Below, one piece after another: positions 1-62,116 of a stretch of 64,000 nucleotides of DNA. The notes under the pieces are model-generated. The model did no database searches. It was not told the DNA's origin and saw only the letters and a list, made by a program, of their open reading frames with translations. Source of the DNA: Haliotis cracherodii (lineage: Eukaryota); NCBI RefSeq assembly GCF_022045235.1, contig NW_027266308.1:35588001-35652000 (forward strand). The letters are read 5' to 3'. The position numbers and the translations under genes are program-made. The first letter of the stretch is position 1; every line of letters starts with the position of its first letter.

Positions 1-39
1 CAGCGAAACCTTGGTCTGTCAGCAAGGCATCAGTTGATT
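1..39 (-). CDS. Paralog 1, exon 2 (start only, runs off the window): ESTDALLTDQGFA...
   Basis: Acceptor TTTTCTTACAG| at 41/40. The phase-1 join gives E-S as in paralogs 2 and 5. Frame is open to the window edge. Confidence 0.7.
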
Positions 40-203
40 CTGTAAGAAAAAAGAGCAGTTCATAAGTAATTTTGTTCACTATAGGATCATTTTCAAAATT
101 ATATGCATAAGCACATGAAAAATGAATCATGTAGAAAACGTAAAATTTTTTTTTCATTATCCGTTACTTTTACGTTCAGATTCTGGTGACAACGTATACA
201 TAC

Positions 204-453
204 CTATAAGAGAGTATAAATCGCTTTCTAAGACACCGTCCGATTCATGGGAACTTGAAGCACTGTTTGCGTCATGTGTGACAAGCTGAGCGTCATGGTA
301 GACGTAGTCGCTCCAGTCAGTGGCTATCAACAGAGCAGGCTGGTACATATGTTGAGGGTCATCCAGACCTGGGAACTTGGACATATCCAGATCGTAGGTG
401 ATGTTGGTGTCGATACTTAGAGTTTGGAGGAGATGAGTAGGTACGTCCATCAT
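204..453 (-). CDS. LDMxKFPGLDDP-family paralog 1, exon 1 (MMDVPTHLLQTLSIDTNITYDLDMSKFPGLDDPQHMYQPALLIA...ESDLYSLI)
   Basis: Family motif in ORF 157..504. ATG at 453 matches the paralog 2 start (MMDVP). Donor ATAG|GTATGT at 204/203, phase 1. Confidence 0.85.
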
Positions 454-502
454 ATTGAAGGTGACACATGGGAATAATGCCACAACTCGTTTCACCCGGG
501 AC

Positions 503-640
503 ATATAGGCCTGTCAGTAGCGTGACTCTGTAAATGGACCAATCACATCACACGACACTAATCCTAAACAACCAATCAGACGTGAGTTGATATAATGAGA
601 AACGCGACGCCGTTAATTATAACGCGAGGAGAGCCAATGT
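503..640 (-). promoter_or_regulatory. Paralog 1 promoter: TATA-like (507-503), TALE-type CTACTGACAG (519-510), CCAAT at 539, 572 and 634
   Basis: Motifs read directly. Same order and spacing as the paralog 2 promoter. Confidence 0.6.
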
Positions 641-904
641 GTCAAGCGATTACCGAATTGACACGGAGCACCGTCTCGCCCCAGGGCGTCGCTTGTCAGT
701 GGGAGGAGATAAACAATACCCCCAAGATATTTACTCGGCTGGGGTGCGAGCTATTATCGGATCATTTATCATCTTATGATGTACACTGTTTATAGATGTG
801 CCTTGAAATAAACCCCAGACACTGGCGCTTCAGTTTTCTTTCGTTTAACAATAATTTTACATAAATGCGATTTTGAAGACATGTCGAAAACCACGTGGGC
901 AATA

Positions 905-1037
905 NNNNNNNNNNNNNNNNNNNNNNNNNNNNNNNNNNNNNNNNNNNNNNNNNNNNNNNNNNNNNNNNNNNNNNNNNNNNNNNNNNNNNNNNNNNNNNNN
1001 NNNNNNNNNNNNNNNNNNNNNNNNNNNNNNNNNNNNN
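905..1037. other. Assembly gap (N run)
   Basis: N bases. Confidence 0.99.
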
Positions 1038-2029
1038 TGTTATTTCATAGTGATACACACATAAATGCATATGATATAGTCGGAATTGTACAATGAACTT
1101 ATTAAAGATTTCTTAAGATAATGGAAATGATTTTTGTTGCTTTTAACTTTGATGAACCAGGAATACATGGTTTCAAATGTAGTGAGGTAATTTGATTTTA
1201 AGGTTATCTCTCATACAGACCCTCAAACAAACTATATGAAAACTACCATGCAAGTCTGAAACACCCTGTCAAGCCTACAAACTGACGCAATTCTCTAAGA
1301 ATCCTTACTATCATGTATTAAAAAGAAATTTCACCTAAACAATATTAAATATTTACATTTTAGGAGGTAAATGTTCGTCTCGCTTCCACGAATAAGAAGC
1401 AATACATTTAATGTACATCTTATCTGGAGATGATTATTTCAACAAAAGAAGTAAGGGCAATAAAAACTTCATTACTTTACTTATTCAGCGATTAAAAAGG
1501 AGGTATTGTTCCAATAATAGCACCGGTCACACTTTGAACTATAGACCTCCGAGACGCCATGTCCCTGATTACATTAACAAGGGCCATCTTTCACCTGAGT
1601 TCTATTTTTGCTGATACAAGTGGCTATTCATGCGTCGAACGAATTAATAACAGGATGTACACCTTACCTGGACATTATCATCATGTGTCACAACTGACCG
1701 ACCATCTGACCCCAGGGGACATTGGTCGGGACAGAGGAGTCCAACCGTGGATTAAGGGGGAAATTCAATTATGACTAATTTACACAAAATGTCACGTTAG
1801 GGGCGGAGGGGCTGCCCGGGATTAGCTTTTTGTCTTGTATTCATCGCTATTGGCGGTCCTTCTTTGAATTTAACGACAGATGGTAAATGATGCTTACGTG
1901 CAGGTCTTTTATGACATCATTGATGCCAGAGTAATGGTAGCCCTCGTCCGTAATTAACCGTCCCTGAAAGGATTGTTATAGCCCAATTGTTATAAATGAG
2001 ATTATGTAATAGGAAAATATTCTTTTTGA

Positions 2030-2270
2030 GTTTTGTGGGAGGCAACAAAATAATACATCCCTTCTCATCCCGCTACCATAAAACTCTGGCAATTCGCAAG
2101 TTATTGTATGTTTCAAAATTCCAAATTTGCTCTCCAAATTAAGTAAGTAATCCTAAAGGCCCCCCTTTGTTGCCTCACCTTTTCGGATATACCCTTTTCG
2201 ACCAATCACCGAATGGCCTGGCGGGCCCGTGCGCAAAATATGCATATGTCGGAAAGCGCACGTTAAATTC
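2030..2270 (+). repeat. Unclassified dispersed repeat ending AATGGCCTGGCGGGCCCGTG..GTCGGAAAGCGCACGTTAAA; copies at 7860-8095 and 43860-44115
   Basis: Three similar copies. Confidence 0.75.
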
Positions 2271-2885
2271 CCAGTTTACGCACGGACTTGCATAACCTAT
2301 TTATTTAGGTTATGTAGGTCAGTGATTTAAGTAATTAAAAAAAATATATTAACACCTCATTCTTCTGAACTTCCAGTGAACTTTGATCTGGAGTATATAT
2401 TTTTTTCTTGTTAAGCATTTTCTTAAATCCCATCAATCAAGCTCAAACGAATGAGAAGGGGTTAAATCCAAAAATGTGAACTTAATAATACAGACTCATA
2501 TTTCAAAACTAATTGACTTATTAGACATCAAAGTCATCCTTTAATAACCTAAAGCTGCCTGAACGCGGCAGTACATTTCAGATCAATATCGAAAACACAT
2601 CAATAACACGTGAAACATGTCTCCACTGTCATTGATAAACCATAATTATAACCAGTTGCCCATAAACCTATTGATTTACAAGTTGGTGTAATCTCTACTT
2701 TTTGTGTCTATACAAAAGTATGGTAGTTTTGTCCCTGAAACCTTACTTATTTACGTACGCTGTCACAGCTGGTATGTAGACAATCGGTATTCAAAAATAC
2801 TCTACCTATATCACGGCGGCTTGTCTTTGCACGGGTATGGATGTGGCAAACCCGTGACCAACAAGAGCAACGACCGATGCCATCG

Positions 2886-3042
2886 GTGAGTGAGTGAGTA
2901 TGGTTTTACACCGCTGAAGCAATATTCCAGCAATATCACGGCGGGGGACACCAGACATAGGCTTCACACATTGTACCCATGTGGGGAATCGAACCCGGGT
3001 CTTCGGCGTGACGAGCGAACGCTTTAACCACTAGGCTACCCG
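2886..3042 (-). mobile_element. Family B tRNA-derived SINE (A box TAGCCTAGTGG, B box GGTTCGATTCC, (ACTC)n tail)
   Basis: Pol III boxes and tail visible; multiple copies in the window. Confidence 0.88.
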
Positions 3043-3072
3043 ACAGAGCATGACCACATGACCCAGCACAGT

Positions 3073-3333
3073 TTGTTTCGTTTGTTTGTTGTTTAACGCC
3101 GCACTCAGTAATACTGCAGCAATGTGACGGCGTTCTGTAAATAATCGAGTCTGGACCAGACAATAAAGTGATTGAGCATCGATCCACGCAATTGGGATAT
3201 GATGACATGCTTCAACCATGTCAGCGAGCATGACCACCCGATCCCATTTGTCGCATCTTACGACAAGCGAAGTCGCCTTTTTCGACAAGCATGTGTTGCT
3301 GAAGACCTATTCTACGGCGGATCTTCACGGGTG
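3073..3333 (-). mobile_element. Family A SINE-like retroposon (5' GACCCGTGAAG...GCTTGTCGTAAGAGGCGACTAA...GCTGGAATATTGCTGAGTGCGGCGTTAAA(CAAA)n)
   Basis: About 20 full or partial copies in the window, each with a simple-repeat tail. Confidence 0.85.
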
Positions 3334-4779: not shown

Positions 4780-4887
4780 CTATGCTAGAGCTAGCTTAAA
4801 CTGGCTAGACTTGCTTTTGTATGCATTTCTAGATTATTATTTTTTCATAAAATAAATATATCCCACGGTCATGGTGCAGGACTATCA
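4780..4887. repeat. Dispersed repeat with an inverted copy at 46284-46385; 6128-6181 also matches 46419-46471
   Basis: Direct sequence match. Confidence 0.75.
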
Positions 4888-9064: not shown

Positions 9065-9417
9065 CTAAGAATCTCTTCCAAAGATGCAATTATTGGAAGT
9101 TGGGTACACAGAAACAAGCGATGGGAGCATTGCTGTATGCGTGTCAACTTCTGTCATTCTGTATTTCTTGCTGGTATACAAATGGTCAGTATCACTGGAG
9201 TGACGTCGCTTCTGGCCCCTTCCGCCTAGGGGCGATAACTGTGATTGGTAACAACAGTCTGTTGAGGATTTTAAATCCGACAAAGTGAAATCTGATTCAT
9301 CCCAAAGGTTGCCGCAAGATGCCGTTGAGGAGATCACTTCATCCAATAGAGCTTCGAAATTGGCATTTTCATCACTGCTTGAATCTGTAAATTCCGGGAA
9401 CAGGACCTCGCTGGATT
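9065..9417 (-). CDS. Paralog 2, exon 2 (ESSEVLFPEF...EALLDEVI...KRRHSSDTDHLYTSKKYR...); spliced protein about 190 aa
   Basis: Acceptor TTTTTCAG| at 9419/9418. Joins in frame with ORF 9065..9346. Bipartite basic motif. Confidence 0.82.
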
Positions 9418-9624
9418 CTGAAAAATGACAATGCAGATATAAATATATATAATATAAACGATTATTATGTTTTTTAATATCTGGTAATTATTTAGATTAG
9501 ATATATTTAGATTTAGCTGAAATATTTGCATAACCTTTGCATAATAATACTGGCTAAAGGATTGTATAAGATACACATAAATGTTTCTGATTCATGCAAT
9601 TTAATAGATTTGGTAGATACATAC

Positions 9625-9844
9625 CTATGAGAGAGTATAAGTCATCCTCAGGAATATCGGCGTCATGTGTGACAAGTTGTGCGTCATGGTAGACGTAGTC
9701 GCTCCAGTCAGTGGCTATCAACAGAGCAGGCTGGTACATATGTTGTGGGTCATCCAGACCTGGGAACTTGGACATATCCAGATCGTAGGTGATGTTGGTG
9801 TCGATACACAGAGGTTGAAGCAGGTGGGGAGGTACGTCCATCAT
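9625..9844 (-). CDS. Paralog 2, exon 1 (MMDVPPHLLQPLCIDTNITYDLDMSKFPGLDDP...EDDLYSLI)
   Basis: Motif in ORF 9554..9877. Donor ATAG|GTATGT at 9625/9624. TATAAA at 9903-9898. Confidence 0.88.
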
Positions 9845-9883: not shown

Positions 9884-9984
9884 TTACATCACGTCACTTT
9901 ATACCCCTCGTGTCACTCAGGTCACTAAGACTCACTGTGGCAGCGTCCAATCAAATCACTTGGGACCGACTGTACTCATCCAAT
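9884..9984 (-). promoter_or_regulatory. Paralog 2 promoter: TATAAA (9903-9898), TGAGTGACAC (9919-9910), CCAAT at 9947 and 9980, TGATGTAA (9891-9884)
   Basis: Motifs read directly; TATA lies about 55 bp upstream of the ATG. Confidence 0.62.
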
Positions 9985-10443
9985 CAATGGAGGATTTAAT
10001 CAACCATGGCGCGCCGGTTAGAATTACCCACAGCGGTGCTCATTGTGTGACTGATGATTAACATAAGTGACACGATGTATTGCCTCACGCACCCCCACCC
10101 CGTCCCCCTCCAATCCCCCGAGGTTGAATACTTGTATACCCCGGGGTGTTTGTTTGACAATACCTGTGAAATACTCGCGGATTACAAATCAGCTTTGATG
10201 TTGTTTTTGTCTGGCAATTTATCTGAGGAGGTTGTAATTATTCACACGTTGAAACGCTTTCAATTCACCGCTGTGTAATCGTAGTAAATAGTAGGCTTTG
10301 TTGATTTAATGCTTCACCCATGGGTATTAAGTTCTGGTGAGACTACAAAAGTATTATTTTTTAATTTGGGTTATCGCGCCATCCCTGTGTAATGATGGCA
10401 TTTGGTTTTTCATTTGTTTTCTGTTGGCGGTGTCTCTGTCTAT

Positions 10444-20202: not shown

Positions 20203-20554
20203 ATGTTACATCCAGCTGCTACAGTGTCTCCGCAACTAAAACAGCCGCTGTACATCGACACGGACATTAACTACAGTTTGGATATGTCCAAGTTCCCTGG
20301 TCTGGACGACCCTTCCCACCTTCAGCAGCCAGCATTGTTGATCGCCACAACGGACACACTTTCAAACTATTTCTATCATTGTGCACATGCCATTACGCCT
20401 AGTGAAGTTACAGATGCTGACAATGCCATGTCTACCTGTTGTGTGCAGTATCCTAAGCACGTGGATGCACCTTCCAAGTTTCCCGATAACAACATTAGCA
20501 ATCATTCTGATGCATCTTGTGGACATATCTTGGAGGATATTCTTAATGTGATAG
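20203..20554 (+). CDS. Paralog 3, exon 1 (MLHPAATVSPQLKQPLYIDTDINYSLDMSKFPGLDDP...LEDILNVI)
   Basis: Motif in ORF 20203..20577. Kozak-like CACCATG. Donor ATAG|GTAAAT at 20554/20555. Confidence 0.88.
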
Positions 20555-20824
20555 GTAAATATTTCGTTTATTGTTGACTACTGATGACTCCTTAATTATC
20601 AATTTCTGATGCTGCTGTTGATAACTAAGACAAAATTGTTATGGATGAGCAACTTCTTTATTACAATTGGGCGACGTTTCGGTGTAAATAAGTTGATAAG
20701 TTTGATCAGCATAAAAAATAACTAACGAAGTCAGTAACAATGGATAAAAAACGTTTATAATGTCGATTTTCTTGCCGGTATGTGCTTTACATTATCACTA
20801 AATCGAATTATTCCCTTTCTTCAG

Positions 20825-21282
20825 ATACCTGCGCGGACGGATTACTTGAACGATTAATGAAGATTCCAGAGAGTACAATCTCAAACAATACGATAGTACC
20901 AAACAGGAATACACCTCATCAGTGTCACTCTGATCTGTCACACCCACCTCTGTTATCAAGGAACTACCAGCAGAATGGACAAATACATTACAGATTCTTC
21001 CATGGTGCGAGACACGTCCAGAACAACACACCTTCATGTCCTACAGGTGATACTGGATTACGTCGGATTTCTGACTGTGTGCGTAATCTGCAGTCCTTGT
21101 CAGCTGTCAAAGATAGTGTATCTTACAAGAGGAAGCGAACACATGACGGGCTTGAATCTGACATACAAAAGCGACAATGTAAAGGACTCGATACTTTCGA
21201 TATTGGTCGTTACTATGGTTACCATGGATCGTATCTTGGATATCAGCAAGTGCCACCGTTTACAAGACGCGTTGTGACGTAA
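20825..21282 (+). CDS. Paralog 3, exon 2 (DTCADGLLERLM...VRNLQSLSAVK...KRKRTHDGLESDIQKRQCK...); spliced protein about 269 aa
   Basis: Acceptor CCCTTTCTTCAG|. In frame with ORF 20782..21282. Alignable to paralog 4 exon 2. Confidence 0.87.
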
Positions 21283-21857: not shown

Positions 21858-22009
21858 NNNNNNNNNNNNNNNNNNNNNNNNNNNNNNNNNNNNNNNNNNN
21901 NNNNNNNNNNNNNNNNNNNNNNNNNNNNNNNNNNNNNNNNNNNNNNNNNNNNNNNNNNNNNNNNNNNNNNNNNNNNNNNNNNNNNNNNNNNNNNNNNNNN
22001 NNNNNNNNN
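21858..22009. other. Assembly gap (N run), preceded by a family A SINE fragment
   Basis: N bases. Confidence 0.99.
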
Positions 22010-26775: not shown

Positions 26776-27135
26776 GTAGTATACACCACCCATTAAATTA
26801 CATCACGGATTACAGTTCTTGCCCATCGAACAAAAACATTTGCATAATGTCCCTTAGTGTGCCGCGGGGAGGAGTTGTGTAGACATGGCGATTAAACTGA
26901 TGAGGGTTAAGTGCAGGTGAATGAAGGGGGCTTGTCCACCGCTGTCTATCTACACTCAATCCATCCGTGACTAATCCCCGCCACATGTTACAATTCAGCC
27001 GTAAATAGCAGCATTAGCGTGCACCTAACTGACGTAATTTGTTATCATAACTCACTCCAGCCCGCTACTCAATGAGACATCTGTTCTGATTGGCTTAGCC
27101 CTGATGGTGAAGTTACAGGCGTGTAACCTGATTGG
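26776..27135 (+). promoter_or_regulatory. Paralog 4 upstream conserved blocks, plus TGACGTAA (27030) and ATTGG at 27089 and 27131
   Basis: Colinear blocks shared with 19801-20025. Confidence 0.55.
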
Positions 27136-27200: not shown

Positions 27201-27594
27201 ATGAGGAGATATACTGAAATGGAGGTTGGTGTTCCTGTGCCCCTGCGACTGCAACAACCACTGTTCATCGAAACCGACATCACCTACAATCTGGATATGA
27301 CAAAGTTTCCAGGTCTGGATGACCCACAACAAATGTACGAGCCGGCTCTTCTAATTGCATCCCAAGAGAACCCATGGAGTTGTCCAGACTACAGTGGAAC
27401 CCTACCGACGGCAAGCAACACCAGATATAGTTCCCAGCCTTGCAGAAACAACCCTCTAACACAAACCCAATGCAGATTTGTGCCAATGAATAATGTTCCA
27501 AGCATCCTGAACAATACCTCAAGGGACAAGATGTTTCATGCGACAGAAGAATCTTCACCACAAAATCTCCTAGAAGACGTACTTTACATGATAG
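27201..27594 (+). CDS. Paralog 4, exon 1 (MRRYTEMEVGVPVPLRLQQPLFIETDITYNLDMTKFPGLDDP...LEDVLYMI); alternative start at 27219
   Basis: Motif in ORF 27201..27626. Donor ATAG|GTAACA at 27594/27595. Confidence 0.88.
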
Positions 27595-28022
27595 GTAACA
27601 TGGCTCATATTTTAAGCTCACTTTAACTCTTTTATAGAAATATATCGATAAAAAGCGTCCTCTGTTGAAGTAGTGACCATTGAATCTGTGACATGTGTTC
27701 TATTTTCATTACTTAACATAATATACACCTTAATATCCGCTCATAAGAATTCATTCCATAGGACTCCGCTGCAGTAGACTCTTCATAGAATATATTTAGT
27801 TAATGCTAATTCTCAGTTAAAGTAAAAAACTGTATCCATATTCAAACGAAATCTTTAAGAGCAGTTTCCATTGTAGGCTTTCGACTAAATGAGCTAGTGT
27901 TTAAACCATTGTGAAACCCCCAGCTTATGAAAGCTACTGAAGGTGTGGTGTGAATTTTTTTTAAATTGTGATATATTCAAATAGTTATATTATTTCTTTT
28001 AATGAAATTGTTTATATTACAG

Positions 28023-28486
28023 ATTCCTGTCCTAACGGATTACTTGACAAGCTTGTGGACACTAATGTGAGTTCAACCAGTTCTTGTGACTACACAGCCA
28101 ACCGGATACCTCATTGTCCTTCTTATCTGGCAAACGGACCGTGTCGACCACCAACGTACCTGGACAATGCACAACCCTTGTACATGCACAATAGCGTGGA
28201 TGGCACCAGACATTGGGAGTACAATACTCGCGTGTTTCCTTCAAGAGACGGATTAACTCACATCCCGGATTATGTTCGTAATCTCTCTGCTTTGTCATGT
28301 GTTAAGACCAACGCTTGTTCCAAACGAAAACGGAGCAATGATGAAGTTGAATCTGATTCTGTGAAGCGACGCTGTAAAGCTCCCCAATCTATGGGTGCAA
28401 TGTATCCCTATGGTTACAGTGTACCTTACTCGGGACAATATCAATCATTTCATGAGACAATGTTCGGTAGAAGCCTCATGACATGA
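28023..28486 (+). CDS. Paralog 4, exon 2 (DSCPNGLLDKLV...VRNLSALSCVK...KRKRSNDEVESDSVKRRCK...); spliced protein about 285 aa
   Basis: Acceptor TATATTACAG|. In frame with ORF 27968..28486. Homologous to paralog 3 exon 2. Confidence 0.87.
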
Positions 28487-39757: not shown

Positions 39758-40374
39758 GGGTATGTGAATGAAGCACATCAACCAAATATATCAGCAGCGT
39801 GAATCATTTACCTTTCCTGATACTACACAGGGCGGTGGTGGGATCCTAGCGGTTAAAGCGTTCGCTCGTCACGCCGTATACCCGGTTAATATAGCCACTC
39901 CGAAGCATGTAAGGCCACTAACGGTATCACAAGGCTGACGGGAACGGGTGAGGTTCAAGACGATTAATGCTTGATGCAGTGATTGTCTTGTGGAAATTGT
40001 ATGTCCGCTTCAGTTAACACTGAAATGATAGATTAAAAAGTGGCGTTTTCGTTCGTTATACCATTACTCTGCTCGATAACGATAGACGCACATTGATATT
40101 ATGTAGTCATTCTTGCATTTGCACCAACATGGTGTAACTTACGATTGCATTTACAAGCTGTGTGACTGTTATCCAACTGACTGTGTTAACAAAGTGTAAG
40201 AGCACGCTCGTGTGGGTTTCATTTAACGCCGCTTTGAACAGTATTTCAGTTATATCACTGCGTGTCAGAAAGATGCGGGTGTTGAGCCCGAAGTGATGCG
40301 GATCTAAGAAGTTTACCATGTTGGTGATACCCACGAAACGGTACCGTGTGATGGATTGATAAAGTACACGTCGA

Positions 40375-42990
40375 TATGATTAGTCGTGTAGGGATAAAGT
40401 ACATGGTGTATATGATTAGTCGTGTAGGGATAACGTACATGGTGTATATGATTAGTCGTGAAGGGATAAAGTATATGGTGTATATGATTACTCGTGTTAG
40501 GATAACATACACCATGTATATGAGTAGTCGAGAAGGAATAAAGTACATGGTGTATATGATTACTCTTGTCAGGATAAAATACATGATGTATATGATTATT
40601 CGTGTTTGGATAACATACATGATGTATATGATTAATCGTGTAGGGCTTAAGTACATGTAGTATATGATTACTCGTGTTAGGATAACATACATGATGTATA
40701 TGATTACTCGAGAACGGTTGAAGTTCATGGTGTATATGATTACTCGTGTCAGGATAAAATACATGATTACTCGTGTTAGAAAAATCTACATGGTGTATAT
40801 GATTACTCGTGTTAGGATAACATACATGAGGTATATGATTAATCGTGTAGGGATTAAGTACATGTAGTATATGATTACTCGTGTTAGGATAACATACATG
40901 ATGTATATGATTACTCGTGTAGGGATTAAATTCATGGTGTATATGGTTACTCGTGTTAGGATCACATACATGATGTATATGAATAGTCGTGAAGGGATAA
41001 AGTACATGATGTATATGATTACTCGTGTTAGGATAACATACATGATGTATATGATTACTCGTGTAGGGATAAAGTACATGGTGTATATGGATACTTATGT
41101 TAGGATAAAGTACACAATGCATATGGTTACTGTGTAAGGATTAAATACATGATCTATATCATTCCTCGTGTAAGGATAATTTAATGGTATATATGATTAC
41201 TCGTGCTAGGATAAAATACATGATGTACTTGTAGTATATGATGACTCGTGTAAGGATAATGTACATGGTGTATATGGTTACTCATGTTAGGATAAAGTAC
41301 GTTATGCACATGGCTGCTGTTGTAAGGATTAAGTACCTGATATCTATGAATACTCGTGGAGGGATAAAGAATACGATGTATATCATTACTCGTGTAGGAT
41401 AAAGTACAGGATGTATGTGGTTACCAATGTAGGATAAAGAACATGATGTACTAGTAGATGGTTACTCATGTAGGATAAAGAACATGGTGTACTGGTATAT
41501 AATTACTCATGTAGGATAAAGAACATGGTGTACTGGTATATGGTTACTCATGTAGGATAAAGAACATGGTGTACTGGTATATGGTTACGCATGTAGGATA
41601 AAGAACATGGTGTACTGGTATATAATTACTCATGTAGGATAAGGAACATGGTGTACTGGTATATAATTGCTCATGTAGGATAAAGAACATGATGTACTGG
41701 TATATGGTTATTCATCTAGGATAAAGCACAGGATGTACTGGTATATAATTACTCATGAAAGATAAAGAACATGATGTACTGGTATATGGTTATTCATCTA
41801 GGATAAAGTACATGATTTACTAGTAGATGGTTACTCATGCAGGATAATGCACGTGATGTACAAGTAGATGGTTACTCATGTAGGATAAAAAAACATAATG
41901 TACTGGTATATGGTTACTCATGTAGGATAAAAAAACCATGATGTACTAGTATATGATTACTCGTGTAGTATAAAAAAACATGATGTACTAGTAAATGGTT
42001 ATTCATCTAGGATAAAGTACAGGATGTGTATACTTACTCATATAGAATAAAGTACAGCGTGCATATGGTTACTCGTGTCGGATAAAAAAACCATGATGTA
42101 CTAGTTTATGGTTACTCATGTAGGATAAAAAACATGATGTACTAGTTTATTGTTATTCATATAGGATAAAGTACAGGATGTGTATAGTTACTCATATAGA
42201 ATAAAGTACAGTGTGCATATGGTTACTCATGTAGGATAAAAAACATGATGTACTGGTATATGGTTACTCATGTAGGATAATGAACATGATGTACTGGTAT
42301 ATGGTTACTCATGTAGGATAAAAAACATGATGTACTAGTATATGATTACTCGTGTAGTATAAATAACATGATGTACTAGTATATGGTTATTCATCTAGGA
42401 TAAAGTACAGGATGTGTATAGGTACTGATATAGAATAAGGTACAGTGTGCATATGGTTACTCGTGTAGGATAAAGAACATGATGTACTGGTATATGGTTA
42501 CTCATGTAGGATAATGAACTTGATGCACTGGTGTATGGTTACTCATGTAGGATGAAAAACATGATGTACTAGTTTATGATTACTCGTGTAGTATAAATAA
42601 CATGATGTACTATTTTATGATTACTCGTGTATGATAAAAAACTAGATGTACTAGTTTATGGTTACCCGTGTAGGATAAAAAACATGATGTACTAGTTTAT
42701 GGTTATTTATCTAGGATAAAGTACAGGATGTGTATAGTTACTCATATAGAATAAAGTACAGCGTGCATATGGTTACTCGTGTAGGATAAAAAAACATGAT
42801 GTACTAGTTTATGGTTACTCATGTAGGATAATGAACATGATATTCTGGTATATGGTTACTCATGTAGGATAATGAACATGATGTACTTATATATGGTTAC
42901 TCGTGTTGGATAAAATACATGGCGTATTTGATTACTCATGTAATCACCCGTGTTAGTACAAAGTACATGCTGGACATGATTAATCGCGTA
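40375..42990. repeat. Minisatellite array, unit about 33-34 bp changing to about 39 bp (GTATATGATTACTCGTGTAGGATAAAGTACATGAT)
   Basis: About 70 degenerate tandem units read directly. Confidence 0.95.
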
Positions 42991-49653: not shown

Positions 49654-49767
49654 CCAATGGCAAAAATATACGCGAACATTGGTGTGATTGGCTACTGGTT
49701 ATCCACGAAGTGACTGACAGGCCTCGTGAGCTGAAATCGACACACAAGCTGAGTGGCAGGGTAAAAT
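49654..49767 (+). promoter_or_regulatory. Paralog 5 promoter: CCAAT/ATTGG (49654, 49678, 49687), TGACTGACAG (49711-49720), weak TATA (49762)
   Basis: ACTGACAGGCCT is shared exactly with the paralog 1 promoter. Confidence 0.6.
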
Positions 49768-49808
49768 GCGCGTGAAGTTGTGAAGCAATAGTCACAATGC
49801 CATTCACC

Positions 49809-50055
49809 ATGCAAGACGTTCCTTCCCGCTTTCTTCAACCGCTGTTTATCGACACCAACATCACCTACGATCTGGATATGTCCAAGTTCCCAGGTCTGGA
49901 CGACCCACAACACATGTACCAGCCTGCTCTGTTGATAGCCACTGACTGGAGCGACTACGTCTACGGTCATTGTGACGCAAAGCGCGTCACGGGTGATGCT
50001 GTCATCAAACTGAACGAATCTACACGTTTCCAACAAAATGGACCCTCACCAACGG
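49809..50055 (+). CDS. Paralog 5, exon 1 (MQDVPSRFLQPLFIDTNITYDLDMSKFPGLDDP...GPSPT); alternative start at 49797
   Basis: Motif in ORF 49797..50069. CACCATG start. Phase-1 donor ACGG|GTAATA at 50055/50056. Confidence 0.85.
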
Positions 50056-50302
50056 GTAATAACATATAATTAACATATATCCTGATTATATTCACATTAA
50101 GTTATTCATGTAATTCTAAAATATATGACCTTTTATCTTGATAAAAAGAGGGAGATGGATGTCCCAGTCGCCACAATTAGCTTGCAGAGTTGCCTCCCTT
50201 GGGTGGGACAGCAAGAGATGAACTTTAGTTCGAATCCCAGATTCGACTTAATTACGATTCTTGGTTTGTTGGCACCATATCAGTGCTCGTTGGTTTTACC
50301 AA

Positions 50303-50555
50303 AGTTGTTGTTTGTTTGTTTGTTTGTTGTTTAACGCCGCATTCAGCAATATTCCAGCTATATGACGTCGGTCTGTAAGTAATCAAGTTTGGACCAGACA
50401 ATCCAGTGATTGACAACATGAGCATCGATCCACGAAATTGAGATCGATGACATGTATCACCCAAGTCAGCGAGCCTGACCACCCGATCCCGTTTGTCGCC
50501 TCTCACGACAAGCATGGGTTGGTGAAGACACATTCTACCCCGGATCTTCACGGGC
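50303..50555 (-). mobile_element. Family A SINE in the paralog 5 intron
   Basis: Matches family A consensus. Confidence 0.85.
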
Positions 50556-50805
50556 CACCAAAGTTGTAAACATCTTAGACATGTTGGGGTACAAAGTGTG
50601 AAGCCCATTTCTGGTGTCCCCCACCGTGATATTGCTGGAATGTTGCTAAAAGCGGCGTAAAACCATACTCACTCACTTAGACATGTTGACGCCATGCTGA
50701 CAACTGTTTAAAGCGACGTAAACCGAACTCACTCACACACACTGATAAGATGAAGTCAACAGATGTGACAGGAGTGGTTGAGATTAATAATTTCCATATT
50801 TCGGC

Positions 50806-51088
50806 CGGGGGCACGGGTGGCCCAGTCGTCTAAGGCGCCGCAATTCGCTGTTCAGAGCTGCGTCCCTTGGCCACGGCAGAAACCTATGATTGTGGGTTCG
50901 AATCCCGGTTCGCCCTGATTATGTTTCTAGGTTTGTCAGCACCATACCCGTGCTCGTGGGTTTCACCGAAGTGGTAAACGTCTGAGACCTGCATCACTTC
51001 GGGCTTTCCTCCCACATTAAGCTGACACGCCGTGATATAACTAGAATAATGTTAAAAGCGGCGCTAACCCAACCCGCTCACTCACTCA
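50806..51088 (+). mobile_element. Family C SINE in the paralog 5 intron
   Basis: Matches 38940-39216. Confidence 0.85.
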
Positions 51089-51179
51089 CATATTTCAGCC
51101 ATATCGTGATAGGGCTCATATTTGTATCGATGTTAATATTGTCATGCAACACTTTAATGACTGTCTATTATTTCTGCAG

Positions 51180-51565
51180 AGTCTCCATTTCGTCTTCTGT
51201 CCGGCCCTGGCTGCTGCGGACCATTAGATTCGGACACGTACAAGGTCATGCTTGATGACGTCATCAAAGACGCAGCACTCTCAAGTCACGTGTTTGACTT
51301 CGTTGATACAGACCCGGATGCTTGCAAATCTGATTTAACAGACATTACAGGTGTATTGACAGAAGGGATATTTGGAGAGGCTGACGTTTCTGGGGACAAT
51401 CAGAAATACGCAAATGATCGGAAACGAAACCGGCCATGTGATAGCGAGTTTGGTATCAGCGCAAACAAGAAATCCAAAATGGTGGACAGGTCTCTCGACC
51501 GTCTTCCGAGCCGTTTATCGGTATGTCTCACTTCAAGATCTTTGGAATCAAACCGAGGATCATGA
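51180..51565 (+). CDS. Paralog 5, exon 2 (ESPFRLLSG...VMLDDVI...RKRNRPCDSEFGISANKKSK...); spliced protein about 210 aa
   Basis: Acceptor TTTCTGCAG| at 51179. The phase-1 join reads stop-free into ORF 51248..51565. Bipartite basic motif. Confidence 0.8.
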
Positions 51566-55748: not shown

Positions 55749-56167
55749 CTACGACTCTCTTCGACTTCGCGTTCCGCATTCATCTGATGACATTCTTGGG
55801 GTAGCGTTTGTCATTTCATCACCAAGGCGTAGGTGATGAAGACAAGTTCCAAGGTAAGCAGCATACATGCTGCAAGACTGACACACACCTTCTGTGGCAC
55901 AGGGTTCCCGGAACAAAGCTGCAACATCATCACAAGAGGATGCTGTGTGTCGCCACTGGTTCCCATGGTGATCGTTGCTCAGATAGTAATTGTCTTGGTG
56001 GTACACACTGTCGAAACAGCCTGTCCTATTAAGCATATGGACATCCGTATTGGGAGAATCATATACCATCTCCAGTAGGTCCAGTTCGTCATCAGATGGC
56101 ATGGCATATATGACGTCATTCGGGGGACCTTTTGTGGCGTCGCTAGGAGGTGACAAATTGCAGGAAT
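55749..56167 (-). CDS. Paralog 6, exon 2 (DSCNLSPPSD...DELDLLEMV...TRSRRES); spliced protein about 232 aa
   Basis: Acceptor TTTTTCAG| at 56169/56168. The phase-1 join gives D-S, in frame with ORF 55749..56201. Confidence 0.75.
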
Positions 56168-56202
56168 CTGAAAAATTGAACATACGAGGTTTTACGCACA
56201 TA

Positions 56203-56700
56203 TGCGTAGTGTGATGATCATGATGTCAATCACTGGATCGTCTGGTCCAGACTCGAGTATTAACCAACTGCCGTCATATTGCTTGAATATTGAGTGCGGC
56301 GTTCAAAAACAAATAATCAAACAAACAATATCACTTAAATGTGGACATACGAGGTTTTACGCATATATATTCAAAAGGTCCATATCCTTCCCAGCGTTCG
56401 GAGAATGAAATTTTCATCGAAGTTTCATTTTTGTTATTTCCATCTGAATTCCTGTCTCGTCACAAGTTATCAATAAACCTATTTGCAAAATAAATCTCAA
56501 GAGGCGACTAACGGGATCGGGTGGTCAGGCTCGCTGACTTGGTTGATGCATGTCATCGTATCCCAAATGCGTAGTGCGATGCTCATGATGTCAATCACTG
56601 GTCCAGACTCGAGTATTAAGCAACTGCCGTCATATTGCATGAATATTGAGAACGGCGTTAAAGAACAAATAATCAAACAAACAATATCACTCAAATGTGG
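56203..56700 (+). mobile_element. Two family A fragments in the paralog 6 intron (56203-56330 and 56498-56685)
   Basis: Match the family A 3' portion. Confidence 0.8.
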
Positions 56701-57017
56701 ATCGGTTGGTTAAATGTATGGTCTGGTTTTGTGAGTGAGTAAGTTAAAGTTTTACGTCACATCGGCAATATCTCGGCCATATAGTGACGAGAACAAATTG
56801 AAAGATAACTCTGGTTTTGTGTATGTGATCGCACCCGAGTGTGTCCACCAATAATATGCCACTGGTTTTCTTGGTCCAAACTGTATTATTACAGGTAAGA
56901 TGAGGTGGGGTGAAATTCCGTGTCTCATTATTCTGACTCCCAGCCGACGGTGGTCCGATCAACGGGCGTATCATACCAAAAGACGGTACGGGTTGTTGCC
57001 CCGCCTAGCGCTCGGCG

Positions 57018-57563
57018 ACGGCCTCCGTGGTCTAGTGGTAGAGCGGAAGGTCCGGGGTCGATCCCCGTCACACCAAAAGACGTTAAAAGGTGGTACTTGT
57101 TGTTACCCTGTCTGGTACTCGGCTTTAAGGGGCTAAACAATGACTGGTCGACTCATATACTGTCAGTATATTGTGTATGAATAGGGTGTCATGCTAAACA
57201 GCCAATCTCTGTGGGCTGACATTACAAAATCGGTAAAGTCCGGACTACTACAAACAGCCACACACGTGCATACACATCGATACAAAAGCGCAATAACCCC
57301 ATGACGTTGAATCCCTTTCAACCTCACCGGCCCAACCCGGCCTTGGCTTTTTTGCCGTAAAGAGATGAGGTGAGATTGTGTTCAACGTTACTTTCATGAG
57401 TATTTTTTTTCTCTCTCTCTACTGAGTATACTGACTCCAAGCCGACCATTTCTTGGTTCAGCCCCTTATTGCCGAACGCCAGGGGATATGACGCAGCCGG
57501 GGATCGAACCACCGACCTTCCGTTCTCCGATCAGACGCTCTATCCACTAGACCACGGAGGCGT
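57018..57563. mobile_element. Inverted pair of family D SINEs in the paralog 6 intron
   Basis: Plus-strand copy 57018-57280 and minus-strand copy 57420-57563. Confidence 0.75.
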
Positions 57564-57769
57564 TGGATCATTGCCAGCCCCGTGATTAACTTGTACACTG
57601 CCGACAGCGGAGCAAAACAACAATCACTTTACTGCTGTTGGTAGGTCCGTCTTTATGAATAAAGTCTGAATTTGACAAGAGTTATATTTTTGACTGATAG
57701 CATTAGGGCTAAGCAAACACTAAAATAGGTTTCAATTCCATACAAGGTACCAGTATTTCATGTACTTAC

Positions 57770-58049
57770 CGATCAATGTGTACAAATCCTCTTCGATGCT
57801 GTGGCTGTGTCCGGAATATGTGTAGCCAATATCGTCGTCGACATCCGACGTTGCCCAGGCGTCTTCTACAACGTCGCCATGCTCTGACAACACGGAGATC
57901 CACGAGACGCGGGACTCTGGGGATTCTATCAACAGAGCAGGCTGGTACATATGTTGTGGGTCATCCAGACCTGGGAACTTGGACATATCCAGTTCGTAGG
58001 TGATGTTGATGTCGACGACGAGGGGTTGAAGTAGCGGCGACGACATCAT
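57770..58049 (-). CDS. Paralog 6, exon 1 (MMSSPLLQPLVVDINITYELDMSKFPGLDDP...EEDLYTLI)
   Basis: Motif in ORF 57732..58052. Consensus donor ATCG|GTAAGT at 57770/57769. Confidence 0.87.
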
Positions 58050-58819: not shown

Positions 58820-58960
58820 CAGTTAAAGAACACCCGACTATTTTATATTACTATAGTAAAGCTGTAATGCACAGTTAAAGAACACCCAACTATTTTATAT
58901 TACCATAATAAAGCTGTAATGCACAGTTAAAGAACTCAAGATTCTTTTATGTTACTATAT
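58820..58960. repeat. Tandem repeat of about 52 bp, about 2.7 copies (CAGTTAAAGAACACCC...)
   Basis: Units start at about 58820, 58872 and 58924. Confidence 0.85.
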
Positions 58961-58994
58961 TACTCATGCCATAACCGATTAACTAGTAATAGGA

Positions 58995-59262
58995 TTTGTT
59001 TGTTGGTTTGTTGTTTAACGCCGCACTCAGCAGTATTCCAGCTATATGACGGCGGTCTGTAAATAATCGAGTCTGGACCAGACAATCCTGTGATTGACAT
59101 CATGAACATCGATCCACGCAATTGGTATCGATGACATGCATCAACCAAGTCAGCGAGTCTGACCACCCGATCCAGTTAGTCGCGTCTTTACGACAAGCAA
59201 AGTCGCCTTTAACGGCAAGCATGTGTTGCTGAAGACCTATTTCTCCCCGGATCTTCACGGGT
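58995..59262 (-). mobile_element. Family A SINE, full length
   Basis: Matches family A consensus. Confidence 0.88.
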
Positions 59263-60060
59263 CTAGTAATGTGAAAGAATTGGGCGTTCTTAACTTCTAT
59301 TGAGTTGTGTTTACAGATCCAAATCAAACTTTAAGATGATTAAAAACAAGTTCGTACATAAATCAATCTATAAAATATACCCGAAAAAGTAAAAAGTATA
59401 TAAAAATATGATCCGGAGGGGAGACGTTATTGTAACGAAAATATAATGTTTATTTCAATAAATAGCATGATTTTCAAACAAATATCAAGATGATAATAAA
59501 TATGTTTTCTGTATAATACATGTAATTGATACTCATAAATAAAAACGTATAACAAATATGTGAAAATGACAATACATGTATATAGATGAATGCAGAACTC
59601 AAAAATGGTTTTGATCACTGCACTGTGTTTCCTTGGAATATCACAATGAATATATTTATTCATATATTCGTAAGTAAGAAATCTAGTACGTCTTGGTGTG
59701 AGGGTGGGATGTTGTTTTACGCTACAGGCACTGACTTTTCATGGCGGCCAATGAATAATCGAACCTGGTCCAGACAAACCAGTTGTTGACACAGATGTTG
59801 GGGCGGTGGGGTGCGATGTCATTCTTTCGGCCAAGCCATTCGGAGTTTCCATCCTGACCTCAATATGTCGACTCGTACAATATGCTTGGTGTTCTGGGGA
59901 ATGTTTCTACCCCGGAATCCACAAAGAAGAGTGCATCTTGGGAGAGGATAAGGGCATCTGTGCGCACCCATGATTCGTGTGAGGCAGTTCTTCCAGTGAA
60001 TAAGAATAATTTGCGTCCCCTTTTATTCTCGATCACAAATAGTGACTCTCCTGTTCCCCT

Positions 60061-60587
60061 TTATGATCCTCTGGGAAATATTGTGGCGTTTTTACAGTTC
60101 TTGTGACTAATTGATGTATTAGACGTGTCTATTGTCATCAAACCCTCATCGGATGCAAGAAAGTATCTAAATTCATCGTCACTGACCGACTGGTCCATGG
60201 AGTTATCTCCCTTCCGTGATCTAACATGGCCGCTTGGGGAGAGAAAGGGAGATAACTCGTCCACTAAGTCAATGAAGAGAGGAAGCTGTTCCGTTATGCA
60301 TGTGTCCATATATTGAGACTGATGTGACGAATTTGAATCCGACACATACTGACAGGGAGTAAGCTGTGTGTATGAAGTGTCCTGTAAGTCGGTAATAACA
60401 CATTCAGCTGGCTCATGTTCTGAGGGTTGGATACAATTGTCTTGGTTAGAGCTATTCAACCAATATGTCTTTTCGTCAGTTGTACACTCGAATTCCTGTC
60501 CTTGACCTTCGTGTCCTTGATGTATTGATTCTGTTGGATGCTCACCTTCCATGATCTCCACAGTCTCATATTCAATCAAATGGGAAT
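60061..60587 (-). CDS. Paralog 7, exon 2 (DSHLIEYETVEI...LFIDLVDEL...); spliced protein about 294 aa
   Basis: Acceptor CCTTTACAG| at 60589/60588. D-S join in frame with the acidic ORF 60061..60600. Confidence 0.78.
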
Positions 60588-60866
60588 CTGTAAAGGACAA
60601 AGATGATTTAAATACACGTGGTAACAGCCATCCGAAACATGCATGCGATTAACGCGCTTAAATATAAAACGTCAACGGCAGATATCCCCAGTCTCGATTA
60701 TCCCCCGAAACAGATTCCATTAGGCGTAACAGGTACGATAGCGGTGAAAATTACTAGTATATGACTGGATCACCGAAAATCAGGGTATGCATATCCAACC
60801 TACCGATAGCCCCCACCACTGACCTAATATATAGTTATTCACATAAAACGAGTCATCACTCTTTTT

Positions 60867-61120
60867 GACCAGCGATGATTCCGGTATAGAATAGGTCTTC
60901 AGCAACCCATGCTTCCCGTAAAAGGTGACTATGCTTGTCCTGAGCGGCGACTCACGAGATTGGGTGGTCAGGCTCGCATGTCATCGATAAAATATTGCGT
61001 TGATCGATGCTCAGGATATTAATCACTGGATTGTGTGGTCCAGACTCGATTGTTTCCAGACCGCCGTCATATAGCTGGAATATTGCTGAGTGCGGCGTTA
61101 AACAACAAACGAACCAACCA
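60867..61120 (+). mobile_element. Family A SINE in the paralog 7 intron
   Basis: Matches family A consensus. Confidence 0.82.
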
Positions 61121-61399
61121 TCATTCTTTTGGATCAGTTAGTGACAGACTGTCATCATAATAAACTGGTCTGAAACTTATATGAGCAAATCAAAACGACA
61201 TTATTTAATTTTGATCGTCAGAAATAAACATATGTAGTCCATTTTAACACCCACCACTATTGACTATAAAATAACGTTACAATTTGAAGAAAATATTAAG
61301 TCAGCACAATCTACATCAGATACCATTCGAACTAAACTGAAGGGGAAAAGAAAGTATACAGTTGGATTGGATTTCACCAAATAATTACAAACATTATCA

Positions 61400-61560
61400 G
61401 AACGTTACTAGGCTGAAAACAGTCACCGAAACAATGCAAACTTAAGGTCCAAAACAGAAATATGAGACCCGTATCAAATACATCACCATCCAAAAAACAT
61501 TTCTTGTTTGTTTAATTTTTAGCCACCATCAAACCTGGTGTATGATTTTCTTGCCCTGCA
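61400..61560 (+). repeat. Dispersed repeat (CAAATACATCACCATC.AAAAAACATTTCTTG...); copies at 62965-63090 and around 54715-55360
   Basis: Three similar copies. Confidence 0.7.
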
Positions 61561-61758
61561 GTTTACATCATGGCGCATGCAAAGTGTCGTCCTTCCGCCT
61601 CAACACATAGCTACTTTTCTGGGGTGGGGTGCTTTTGTATTGTGCTGCACTCACTGCATACACATTTGGATTTAAATTAGACTGTTTCCTGTCAGTGTTG
61701 CACTTAACCGTAAATCCTACTATTAGTTTTTAAAACACAAAATAAAGGCAAATCTTAC

Positions 61759-62116
61759 CGTTGAAAAAGTACAACATGCGCGGCGAATTGTGCGTTGAGT
61801 AACATGGCTTTGTCGTAATAGGATCGCTGTCGTTGTCTTCGCCAGATACCAGAGCGTCACAGAAAACGCATCCATCGTCGCCAGGTTCCGTGTCACTGTC
61901 GTCAACGTCGCACTCCTCTTCGTCAGACTCGGGCTCATCATATTGTGTAATCGCATCAAACCAGGCTTCGTTCATCTTCTGAGACGGTAACAGTAGCGTA
62001 GGCTCCTGAATACAATCCGGATCGTCAACACCAGGGAACTTGGTCATATCCAAATCATAGTGAATATCGATGTCCACAGTTAAAACGCCAAGCGTTTCAG
62101 TCACTCCTTCCTTCAT
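61759..62116 (-). CDS. Paralog 7 (most divergent), exon 1 (MKEGVTETLGVLTVDIDIHYDLDMTKFPGVDDPDCIQEPTLLL... then acidic tract)
   Basis: Motif in ORF 61730..62176. First ATG (AAAATG) at 62116. Donor AACG|GTAAGA at 61759/61758. TATATAA at 62248-62242. Confidence 0.85.

What the first reader, a model, noticed from the sequence alone, without database searches (positions are those of the whole stretch)
1..62116. Tandem cluster of seven two-exon genes defining an unrecognised protein family (LDMxKFPGLDDP motif)
Seen in sequence: seven ORFs share LxI[DE]T[ND]IxYxLDM[ST]KFPG[LV]DDPx4[QE]P[AT]LL[IL] within about 10-25 residues of the N-terminus. All seven have a phase-1 GT donor, and the downstream AG acceptor joins in frame to give [ED]-[ST]. 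Complete products are 190-294 aa. Outside the motif the proteins are acidic, Ser/Pro-rich and mostly unalignable, with no signal peptide, TM segment or DNA-binding fold that I recognise. Inference: an expanded family of mostly disordered nuclear adaptors or co-regulators. A constant docking motif would bind one partner, and the variable tails would supply different outputs. Short genes with TATA boxes, bZIP sites and AU-rich UTRs resemble inducible immediate-early genes.
Basis: partly seen in the sequence, partly recalled or inferred. Interest (0 to 1): 0.9.

Follow-up and report, generated by a model that had tools for sequence, protein, structure and literature searches.

The report
Mollusc orphan family of disordered nuclear proteins
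The seven small two-exon genes are real members of a 25-copy black-abalone gene family, also found in limpets, mussels, scallops and pearl oysters, whose mostly unfolded proteins share one strictly conserved N-terminal motif. Their function is unknown; they look most like nuclear transcription co-regulators.

Summary
All seven ORFs carry the motif, and all have canonical phase-1 GT..AG introns joining to [ED]-[ST]. Neither assembly gap touches a coding sequence. Three models (g1, g5, g6) are letter-identical to Haliotis cracherodii RefSeq proteins, all named "uncharacterized protein".

- There are 25 intact copies on one chromosome, in two clusters.
- Relatives occur in four Haliotis species, Lottia, Patella, Mytilus, three scallops and Pinctada. 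The intron position is the same in Mytilus.
- I found no Pfam, PDB or literature match.

Selection and structure:
- The motif is under strong purifying selection (dN/dS about 0.05-0.2). In distant paralogs 80% of residues are kept while third codon positions are randomised.
- Among closer paralogs a roughly 110-nt motif-coding block is homogenised, most likely by patch gene conversion.
- AlphaFold finds no fold (pTM 0.22). It predicts a confident but coil-like motif and two acidic amphipathic helices.
- 23 of 25 copies have a bipartite NLS, and 20 of 25 have activation-domain-like composition.

Promoters carry NF-Y CCAAT boxes and TATA-like elements, not conserved bZIP or SRE sites, and AU-rich elements are weak. 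The immediate-early reading is therefore unsupported. The binding partner is unknown.

The parts
1..453 (-). g1. Exon 1 is 204-453 (an upstream in-frame ATG lies at 504), the intron is 40-203, and exon 2 is 1-39 and continues beyond the window start. The full product is 216 aa.
   Evidence: The model completed from L004 is identical to XP_071080488.1 (P0045).
9065..9844 (-). g2. Exon 1 is 9625-9844, the intron is 9418-9624 (207 nt), and exon 2 is 9065-9417 including the stop. Product 190 aa.
   Evidence: It is 74% identical to the H. asinina protein XP_067680175.1 (P0006).
20203..21282 (+). g3. Exon 1 is 20203-20554, the intron is 20555-20824 (270 nt), and exon 2 is 20825-21282. Product 269 aa.
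   Evidence: It is 64% identical to the H. rubra protein XP_046567068.1 (P0004).
27201..28486 (+). g4. Exon 1 is 27201-27594, the intron is 27595-28022 (428 nt), and exon 2 is 28023-28486. Product 285 aa.
   Evidence: It is 72% identical to the H. asinina protein XP_067682190.1 (P0007).
49797..51565 (+). g5. Exon 1 is 49797-50055, the intron is 50056-51179 (1124 nt), and exon 2 is 51180-51565. Product 214 aa.
   Evidence: It is 100% identical to XP_071080486.1 (P0002).
55749..58049 (-). g6. Exon 1 is 57770-58049, the intron is 56168-57769 (1602 nt), and exon 2 is 55749-56167. Product 232 aa. It has no NLS-like element.
   Evidence: It is 100% identical to XP_071080485.1 (P0061).
60061..62116 (-). 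g7, the most divergent copy. Exon 1 is 61759-62116, the intron is 60588-61758 (1171 nt), and exon 2 is 60061-60587. Product 294 aa, net charge -50, no NLS-like element.
   Evidence: Its motif is closest to the Lottia member (55% identity over 31 aa).
9713..9814 (-). Motif-coding block of g2 (PLCIDTNITYDLDMSKFPGLDDPQHMYQPALLIA). The equivalent blocks are 322-423 (g1), 20245-20346 (g3), 27258-27359 (g4), 49839-49940 (g5), 57924-58025 (g6) and 61985-62086 (g7).
   Evidence: Y, F and P are invariant in 57 of 57 sequences. dN/dS is 0.05-0.2. The block is 89-98% identical in DNA among g1, g2, g5, g6, L008 and L016, with sharply divergent flanks.
9947..9986 (-). Paired inverted CCAAT boxes (TGATTGG, NF-Y type) of the g2 promoter, at 9980-9986 and 9947-9953. 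The equivalent pairs are g1 572-579 and 539-545, and g4 27086-27093 and 27128-27135. For g5 there are boxes at 49678-49682 and 49685-49691.
   Evidence: The 7-mer is present in 12 of 16 diverged family promoters, against 4.8% of random 350-nt windows.
9897..9903 (-). TATA box (TATAAAG) of g2, 59 nt upstream of the ATG. Paralogs outside the window have TTTAAAT, TTTAAAA or TATATA at -40 to -60.

Best explanation
These are functional genes of a mollusc-wide family that has not been characterised. They encode small (about 190-310 aa), intrinsically disordered and mostly very acidic proteins.

Each protein has three working parts:
1. An N-terminal linear motif of about 35-45 residues: P-L-x-[IV]-D-T-x-I-x-Y-x-L-D-M-[ST]-x-F-P-G-[LIW]-[DN]-D-P-x4-[QE]-P-x-L-L-I. 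It does not fold on its own. I infer that it docks onto one conserved partner protein, still unknown.
2. A central acidic, hydrophobic-studded region that forms one or two amphipathic helices around the conserved phase-1 intron ([DE]DLxxLI|[ED]S, then LLDDVI). Its composition is that of acidic transcriptional activation domains.
3. A C-terminal bipartite nuclear localisation signal (KRKR-S-x-D ... KRxK).

The most likely mechanism is a nuclear co-regulator. It is tethered through the constant motif and delivers a variable effector tail, usually an activating one.

In black abalone the family grew by tandem duplication to at least 25 intact copies, seven of them in this window. Repeated patch gene conversion keeps the motif-coding block nearly identical among otherwise diverged paralogs. 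Transcription probably runs from compact NF-Y (CCAAT) plus TATA-like promoters.

Shown here: gene structure, conservation, selection, predicted disorder, the NLS pattern, composition and promoter motifs. Inferred: docking, nuclear action and activation.
For: Gene reality:
- All 25 genomic copies have intact two-exon ORFs with phase-1 GT..AG introns.
- At least five models are identical to H. cracherodii RefSeq proteins.
- The intron position is shared with Mytilus. P0022 is exon 1 of P0018 read through into the intron at ...ELI|G.

Conservation:
- A profile search of 1.84 billion representatives gave 44 hits. Every named one is molluscan and uncharacterised.

Selection:
- Motif dN/dS is 0.05-0.2, and tails are 0.2-0.7 in young pairs.
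- Between g2 and L022/L023 the motif keeps 80% of its residues while third-position identity is only 0.46.
- Between Haliotis species the motif differs at 0-15% of residues and the rest at 3-38%.

Disorder and helices:
- AlphaFold gives pTM 0.22-0.23. The motif has pLDDT about 80 but is coil. Helices fall at residues 72-92 and 99-112 of P0045.

Nuclear signal and charge:
- A bipartite NLS pattern is present in 23 of 25 copies. pI is 4.1-4.7 in most, and there are no hydrophobic segments.

Activation-domain composition:
- 20 of 25 copies have 39-residue tiles with net charge of -9 or lower and at least 7 W/F/Y/L residues.

Transcription link:
- The relative P0029 carries PIDLSQEPLDLSQ, two textbook CtBP-binding motifs, in place of the acidic helices.

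Gene conversion:
- The motif block has sharp edges in the DNA alignment.
- The block shows no RNA structure signal (z = 0.24).

Promoter.
Against:
- The partner is unknown, and no known short linear motif fits the invariant Y..LD...FPG core.
- g6 and g7 lack the NLS pattern.
- The long subfamily (g3, g4, L022-L025) is near neutral in charge, and four of its six copies (g3, g4, L023, L025) have no tile that passes the activation-domain composition rule, with only one tile in L022.
- The composition rule is recalled from the published activation-domain screens and is not specific.
- The ESM Atlas look-alike (a CIITA N-terminal fragment cluster, score 0.76) is below the level at which hits are meaningful.
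- P0029 is a single sequence of unknown taxon.
Confidence: 0.5

Rival explanations
1. The constant motif is a docking site or degron for a nuclear enzyme such as a phosphatase, kinase or ubiquitin ligase. On this reading the proteins act as adaptors, regulators, decoys or short-lived substrates, in the way IER proteins use a conserved N-terminal segment to recruit PP2A, and not as transcriptional activators.
For: The architecture is the same: a conserved N-terminal segment, a disordered tail and an NLS. The junction motif L-x-x-[LIV]-I-[ED] partly fits the PP2A-B56 LxxIxE pattern, which I recall from memory. The tails evolve fast, as expected for linkers. Pro28 is invariant, in a phi-P-x-phi..DD context loosely like the HIF oxygen-dependent degron (recalled, not tested).
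Against: Pfam finds no IER domain or any other domain. Position 6 of the junction motif is D or A in many members, which weakens the B56 fit. The acidic-hydrophobic helices and the CtBP motifs in P0029 point to transcription.
Confidence: 0.2
2. The motif is chiefly a CRM1-type nuclear export signal. Together with the C-terminal NLS it would make these proteins nucleocytoplasmic shuttles.
For: 49 of 57 family sequences fit the class 1c NES spacing phi-x3-phi-x3-phi-x-phi at I14, I18, L22 and M24. The NLS is present in 23 of 25 copies.
Against: Export signals tolerate wide sequence variation. They do not explain the invariant Y, D, F-P-G, D-D-P and P-x-L-L residues kept across gastropods and bivalves. 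The phi-4 position is T, K or A in some members.
Confidence: 0.1
3. The motif mediates self-association or association between paralogs, so that the 25 proteins form mixed oligomers.
For: All paralogs share one motif, and gene conversion keeps it identical. The motif has an alternating hydrophobic pattern that could form a strand.
Against: AlphaFold predicts coil, not strands. I have no positive evidence for this reading. The motif carries many aspartates.
Confidence: 0.05
4. The ORFs are non-functional: annotation artefacts, pseudogenes or repeat-borne frames.
For: No expression data could be obtained. No domain is known.
Against: All 25 copies are intact. Purifying selection acts on the motif while synonymous sites are saturated. 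The motif, the intron phase and the NLS are conserved between gastropods and bivalves. No transposon domains were found.
Confidence: 0.02

Closest known systems
Vestigial / VGLL cofactors (TONDU motif)
   Same: Small, largely disordered nuclear proteins defined by one short conserved docking motif that tethers them to a DNA-binding partner. Outside the motif they are poorly conserved and exist as several paralogs.
   Different: There is no sequence similarity. Pfam Vg_Tdu does not match any member. The partner here is unknown. The motif is longer (about 35-45 aa) and N-terminal.
IER (immediate early response) family
   Same: A conserved N-terminal segment, a disordered remainder, an NLS and short genes.
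   Different: No IER Pfam match. The promoters carry NF-Y CCAAT boxes and a TATA-like box instead of SRE or CRE elements. These genes have a conserved phase-1 intron.
Acidic activation domains (VP16, CITED, CIITA N-terminus type)
   Same: Strongly negative net charge interspersed with L/F/Y/W residues, and predicted amphipathic helices in a disordered context. The weak ESM look-alike is a CIITA N-terminal fragment cluster.
   Different: This is a similarity of composition only. There is no homology, and activation was not tested.
CtBP-recruiting co-repressors (PxDLS motif)
   Same: The distant relative P0029 carries two adjacent canonical PxDLS motifs. The family core contains x-L-D-[ML]-S-K, which looks superficially like the HIC1 variant GLDLSKK (recalled from memory).
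   Different: In the core motif the defining Pro is absent, and the Leu position is M, T, K, A, F or I across members. The core is therefore not a CtBP motif.

Membership tests
Any Pfam-A family (including Vg_Tdu, IER, CITED, SERTA, Myc_N) | A profile HMM match at or near the gathering score | tested here: not met
   Ten exon peptides from the window, 20 full-length homologues and 6 distant relatives were scanned at E up to 1. Only scattered single-member hits appeared, all below cut-off.
Proteins with a solved structure | Sequence-profile similarity to any PDB chain | tested here: not met
   The exon-1 profile against 177,635 PDB sequences gave one chance-level hit (E = 0.14, a bacterial TRAP receptor).
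CtBP-binding PxDLS motif (as a reading of the core LDMSK) | Pro at position 1 and Leu at position 4 of P-x-D-L-S | tested here: not met
   Column counts over 57 sequences: position 1 is D/E/S/N and never the rule's Pro. Position 4 is M in 41, L in 6, T in 3, F in 2 and others.
Myc N-terminal region (lead: c-Myc PLNVSFTNRNYDLD, recalled from memory) | The same motif at the N-terminus of the species' own Myc, or a Myc_N profile match | tested here: not met
   The abalone Myc_N exon (L026, E = 1.9e-11 to PF01056) starts MAKIHSLEEMDESS... and lacks the motif. Family members do not match PF01056.
Classical bipartite NLS | Two basic residues, a spacer of about 8-14 residues, then a basic cluster | tested here: met
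   The pattern is present in 23 of 25 copies, for example KRKRSNDEVESDSVKRRCK in g4. It is absent in g6 and g7. Nuclear import itself cannot be tested here.
Acidic activation domain (a functional class, not a homology family) | A disordered or helical segment with strong net negative charge plus bulky hydrophobic residues | tested here: met
   20 of 25 copies have 39-aa tiles with charge of -9 or lower and at least 7 W/F/Y/L residues. AlphaFold predicts helices at the same place. Reporter activity cannot be tested with these tools.
Immediate-early genes | Conserved SRE, CRE or AP-1 promoter elements | tested here: not met
   No such element is shared across the promoters. The shared elements are inverted CCAAT boxes and TATA-like boxes.
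Immediate-early genes | AU-rich destabilising 3'UTR | tested here: inconclusive
   There are 0-2 ATTTA pentamers before the poly(A) signal and no UUAUUUAWW nonamers. The background is about 1.6 pentamers per 600 nt.
Immediate-early genes | Rapid induction that does not depend on protein synthesis | not testable with these tools
CRM1 nuclear export signal, class 1c | The phi-x3-phi-x3-phi-x-phi spacing | tested here: inconclusive
   49 of 57 sequences fit, but the pattern is loose and does not explain the invariant residues.

The most novel reading that the evidence does not exclude
The motif is the docking module of a molluscan class of transcription cofactors that has not been described. Under this reading, one conserved nuclear partner is addressed by many paralogs whose tails deliver different outputs: acidic activation helices in most, and CtBP-recruiting PxDLS motifs in at least one relative. 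Patch gene conversion keeps the docking module uniform across a 25-gene array while the tails diverge freely.
Probability: 0.35. Interest if true: 0.6.

Novelty: new variant of a known kind. Interest (0 to 1): 0.45.

Why it matters
Molluscs are a large phylum, important in ecology and aquaculture, and much of their gene content is unnamed. This family has a 35-45-residue motif that has stayed nearly invariant since gastropods and bivalves split. It is present in 25 copies in black abalone, an endangered species, and has no annotation anywhere.

The motif gives a concrete handle for finding a conserved partner, through peptide pull-down or AlphaFold-Multimer screening. The array is also a clean natural example of patch gene conversion confined to the functionally constrained part of a gene.

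It is not a new kind of biological system. Motif-defined disordered cofactors and lineage-specific tandem families are both familiar.

Tried and rejected
Searches that found nothing:
- The search for homologous proteins with g4 exon 1.
- The same tool with the 20-sequence alignment found only five known members, because the prefilter was saturated.
- The same tool with P0029 found only itself.
- ESM Atlas: no usable hit for exon 1, and a sub-threshold 0.76 hit to a CIITA fragment cluster for P0045.
- The PDB profile search found nothing.
- A viral contig scan found no relative.
- Paper searches for the motif string, six LOC or locus tags and six accessions all gave 0 papers. A general abalone stress search gave nothing relevant.
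- Rfam and tRNA scans of the window were empty.

Tests that gave no support:
- Complex prediction for a homodimer of g2 residues 1-52 returned no verdict (score 0.01). This is no evidence either way.
- An RNA structure in the conserved motif-coding block was rejected (z = 0.24).

Leads rejected:
- The core motif as a CtBP PxDLS site.
- Similarity to the c-Myc N-terminus.

Leads considered from memory and not fitted to the column counts: engrailed eh1, the calcineurin PxIxIT motif, Notch RAM phi-W-phi-P, TRAF, LIR, EVH1 and the beta-catenin DxθθxΦ motif.

Tools not available or not used:
- Fold search was not run, because both models have pTM 0.22-0.23 and would give meaningless matches.

Handling of spliced models: joined sequences were built only inside scripts. 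Searches were done exon by exon by reference, or with database proteins identical to the spliced products (P0045, P0002, P0061).

Full report
**Observation**

A six-frame scan of the window finds the KFPG-centred motif exactly seven times, each in an open frame that starts 10-25 residues upstream. Every join is in frame: E-S for g1, g2 and g5, D-T for g3, and D-S for g4, g6 and g7.

The products are 190, 269, 285, 214, 232 and 294 aa for g2 to g7. g1 leaves the window after 13 codons of exon 2 and is 216 aa when completed from locus L004.

I tested the two assembly gaps first, as asked. Gap 905-1037 lies about 400 nt upstream of the g1 start. Gap 21858-22009 lies 576 nt downstream of the g3 stop, beyond its poly(A) signal. 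No exon, intron or junction crosses a gap.

**Organism and existing annotation**

Earlier notes of the scan call the genome an abalone. I confirmed and narrowed this. The spliced g5 and g6 products are letter-identical to XP_071080486.1 and XP_071080485.1 of Haliotis cracherodii. g1, L019 and L024 are identical to XP_071080488.1, XP_071080509.1 and XP_071081095.1. NCBI's pipeline therefore predicts the same two-exon models. All of them are named "uncharacterized protein".

**Handling of spliced models**

Joined spliced sequences were built only inside scripts. They were never sent to a search tool. Searches were done exon by exon by reference, or with the identical database proteins.

**Size and range of the family**

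A profile of the seven exon-1 peptides finds 25 copies in this genome, all on contig C45. Twenty-one lie in a 250-kb cluster at 35.40-35.65 Mb, which includes the window. Four lie at 6.72-6.74 Mb. A broader profile finds the same 25. All 25 give intact two-exon ORFs with a phase-1 intron.

The same profile, run against 1.84 billion representative proteins, gives 44 hits at E of 1e-3 or better. Every hit that carries a name is molluscan and uncharacterised:
- Haliotis rufescens, H. cracherodii, H. rubra and H. asinina
- Lottia gigantea and Patella caerulea
- Mytilus edulis, M. trossulus and M. galloprovincialis
- Mizuhopecten, Argopecten and Pecten
- Pinctada imbricata

Many short hits are exon 1 read through into the intron (...LIG|K). 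In Mytilus, P0022 is the read-through form of P0018. The phase-1 intron position is therefore shared between bivalves and gastropods.

No member matches any Pfam family or any PDB sequence. None of the motif strings, locus tags or accessions appears in the searched literature.

**Anatomy of the proteins**

Column counts over 57 sequences define the motif as P-L-x-[IV]-D-T-x-I-x-Y-x-L-D-M-[ST]-x-F-P-G-[LIW]-[DN]-D-P-x4-[QE]-P-x-L-L-I. Y, F and P are invariant. Eight further positions are at least 90% conserved.

Most members share three further elements:
- [DE]-D-L-x-x-L-I at the exon-1 end, joined to [ED]-[ST]
- a second L-L-D-D-V-I element
- a bipartite NLS-like element of the form KRKR-S-x-D ... 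KR-x-K

The NLS pattern is present in 23 of 25 copies and missing in g6 and g7. Most proteins have pI 4.1-4.7. None has a hydrophobic segment that could be a signal peptide or a membrane span.

AlphaFold2, run with a 54-57-row alignment, finds no globular fold (pTM 0.22 and 0.23). The motif has pLDDT about 80 but stays coil, which is typical of a segment that folds on binding. The two acidic elements are predicted as helices, at residues 72-92 and 99-112 of P0045.

Twenty of 25 copies contain 39-residue tiles with net charge of -9 or lower and at least seven W/F/Y/L residues. That composition is associated with strong acidic activation domains. The threshold is recalled from the published screens, so it is a lead and not a calibrated test.

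**Selection**

Nei-Gojobori estimates give dN/dS of 0.05-0.2 for the motif and 0.2-0.7 for the tails of young paralog pairs.

Between g2 and L022/L023 the motif keeps 80% of its residues, while third codon positions are only 46% identical. This is protein-level purifying selection on top of saturated silent sites. Between Haliotis species the motif differs at 0-15% of positions and the rest at 3-38%.

**Patch gene conversion**

Among g1, g2, g5, g6, L008 and L016, a block of about 110 nt that codes exactly for the motif is 89-98% identical in DNA. Its edges are sharp. The 5'UTR, the first codons, the downstream codons and the intron are unalignable or saturated. The block shows no RNA structure signal (z = 0.24). 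Recurrent gene conversion limited to the constrained block is therefore the best explanation. Another first-stage note on this same stretch (s1-829664) proposed the same thing, and my analysis agrees with it.

**Regulation**

Simple scans find no CRE, AP-1, SRE, HSE or NF-kB element shared across the promoters.

Alignment and k-mer counting do find two shared elements. The first is the NF-Y-type inverted CCAAT box TGATTGG, often extended to CTGATTGG. It occurs in 12 of 16 mutually diverged promoters, against 4.8% of random 350-nt windows. It is commonly present as two copies 31-42 bp apart, at -70 to -140 from the ATG. The second is a TATA-like box at -40 to -60. g6 and g7 have no CCAAT box within 300 nt of the ATG, and g3 has only one, at -285.

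3'UTRs are short, with the AATAAA 130-320 nt after the stop. They hold 0-2 ATTTA pentamers and no ARE nonamers. The immediate-early analogy is therefore not supported by the sequence. A double CCAAT box would fit cell-cycle, early-embryonic or stress genes equally well.

**Function**

I commit to a nuclear co-regulator model at about 0.5. In this model the invariant N-terminal motif docks onto one conserved partner, the acidic helices act as an effector (activation) surface, and the NLS brings the protein into the nucleus.

An independent hint comes from the distant relative P0029 (E = 3.6e-7, taxon unknown). It has two copies of the motif and the KRKR NLS. In place of acidic helices it carries PIDLSQEPLDLSQ, two adjacent textbook CtBP-binding motifs that are very unlikely to arise by chance. 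This is what a "constant dock, exchangeable output" family would look like.

The rival readings are listed here with my estimated probabilities:
- An enzyme adaptor or degron reading, in the manner of IER proteins (0.2).
- An export-signal reading: 49 of 57 sequences fit class 1c NES spacing, but that does not explain the invariant residues (0.1).
- Self-association (0.05). The homodimer job gave no verdict and is not evidence either way.
- Non-functional ORFs (0.02).

**Leads rejected**

The core LDMSK is not a CtBP motif. It has no Pro, and the Leu position is variable. The resemblance to the c-Myc N-terminus (PLNV...YDLD, recalled from memory) is coincidental. The abalone Myc_N exon lacks the motif, and family members do not match PF01056. 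No relative was found in viral contigs.

**Limits**

The partner is unknown. The taxa of the unnamed relatives could not be looked up.

**Verdict**

It is a new family of a familiar kind. Interest is moderate.

Noticed in passing
window 40358-42921: A minisatellite of about 2.5 kb with 36- and 41-bp units (about 33 and 39 copies, 74-80% matches). It has strong GC skew (0.33 in 40001-42000) and lies in the 21-kb gene-free interval between g4 and g5. The long ORFs at 40255-41122 are read through this repeat and have no real Pfam match.
   Followed up: partly
window 61759-62116 (g7) compared with P0019 and P0035: The Lottia and Patella members carry a CxxC-x13-CxxC insertion (CELC...CGFC) after the motif. 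g7 has a related C-x14-CVFC remnant, and its motif is the one closest to Lottia (DPDCIQE against DPECMQQ). g7 may represent the older type shared with limpets, possibly with a small zinc-binding knuckle.
   Followed up: partly
P0012, P0029, P0039 and P0043 (database proteins of unknown taxon): These relatives have the motif internally or repeated two to three times. P0029 also has two adjacent canonical CtBP-binding PxDLS motifs. P0012 and P0029 share an LxHYNxLLG element before the NLS. Their contigs are barely longer than the ORFs, which suggests they are transcripts.
   Followed up: partly
G000:C45:6724421-6739643 (loci L018-L021): A second, tight tandem array of four near-identical family genes spaced 3.5-4.4 kb apart. 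It sits 29 Mb from the main cluster on the same contig. In these copies Met24 of the motif is replaced by Thr (LDTTKFPGL).
   Followed up: partly
L004, L016, L018 and L021 promoters, about 110-140 nt upstream of the ATG: A TAATTA-type homeodomain site followed by GTCGCG(A/T) is conserved between deeply diverged subfamilies, upstream of the CCAAT pair. It may be a further shared regulatory element.
   Followed up: no
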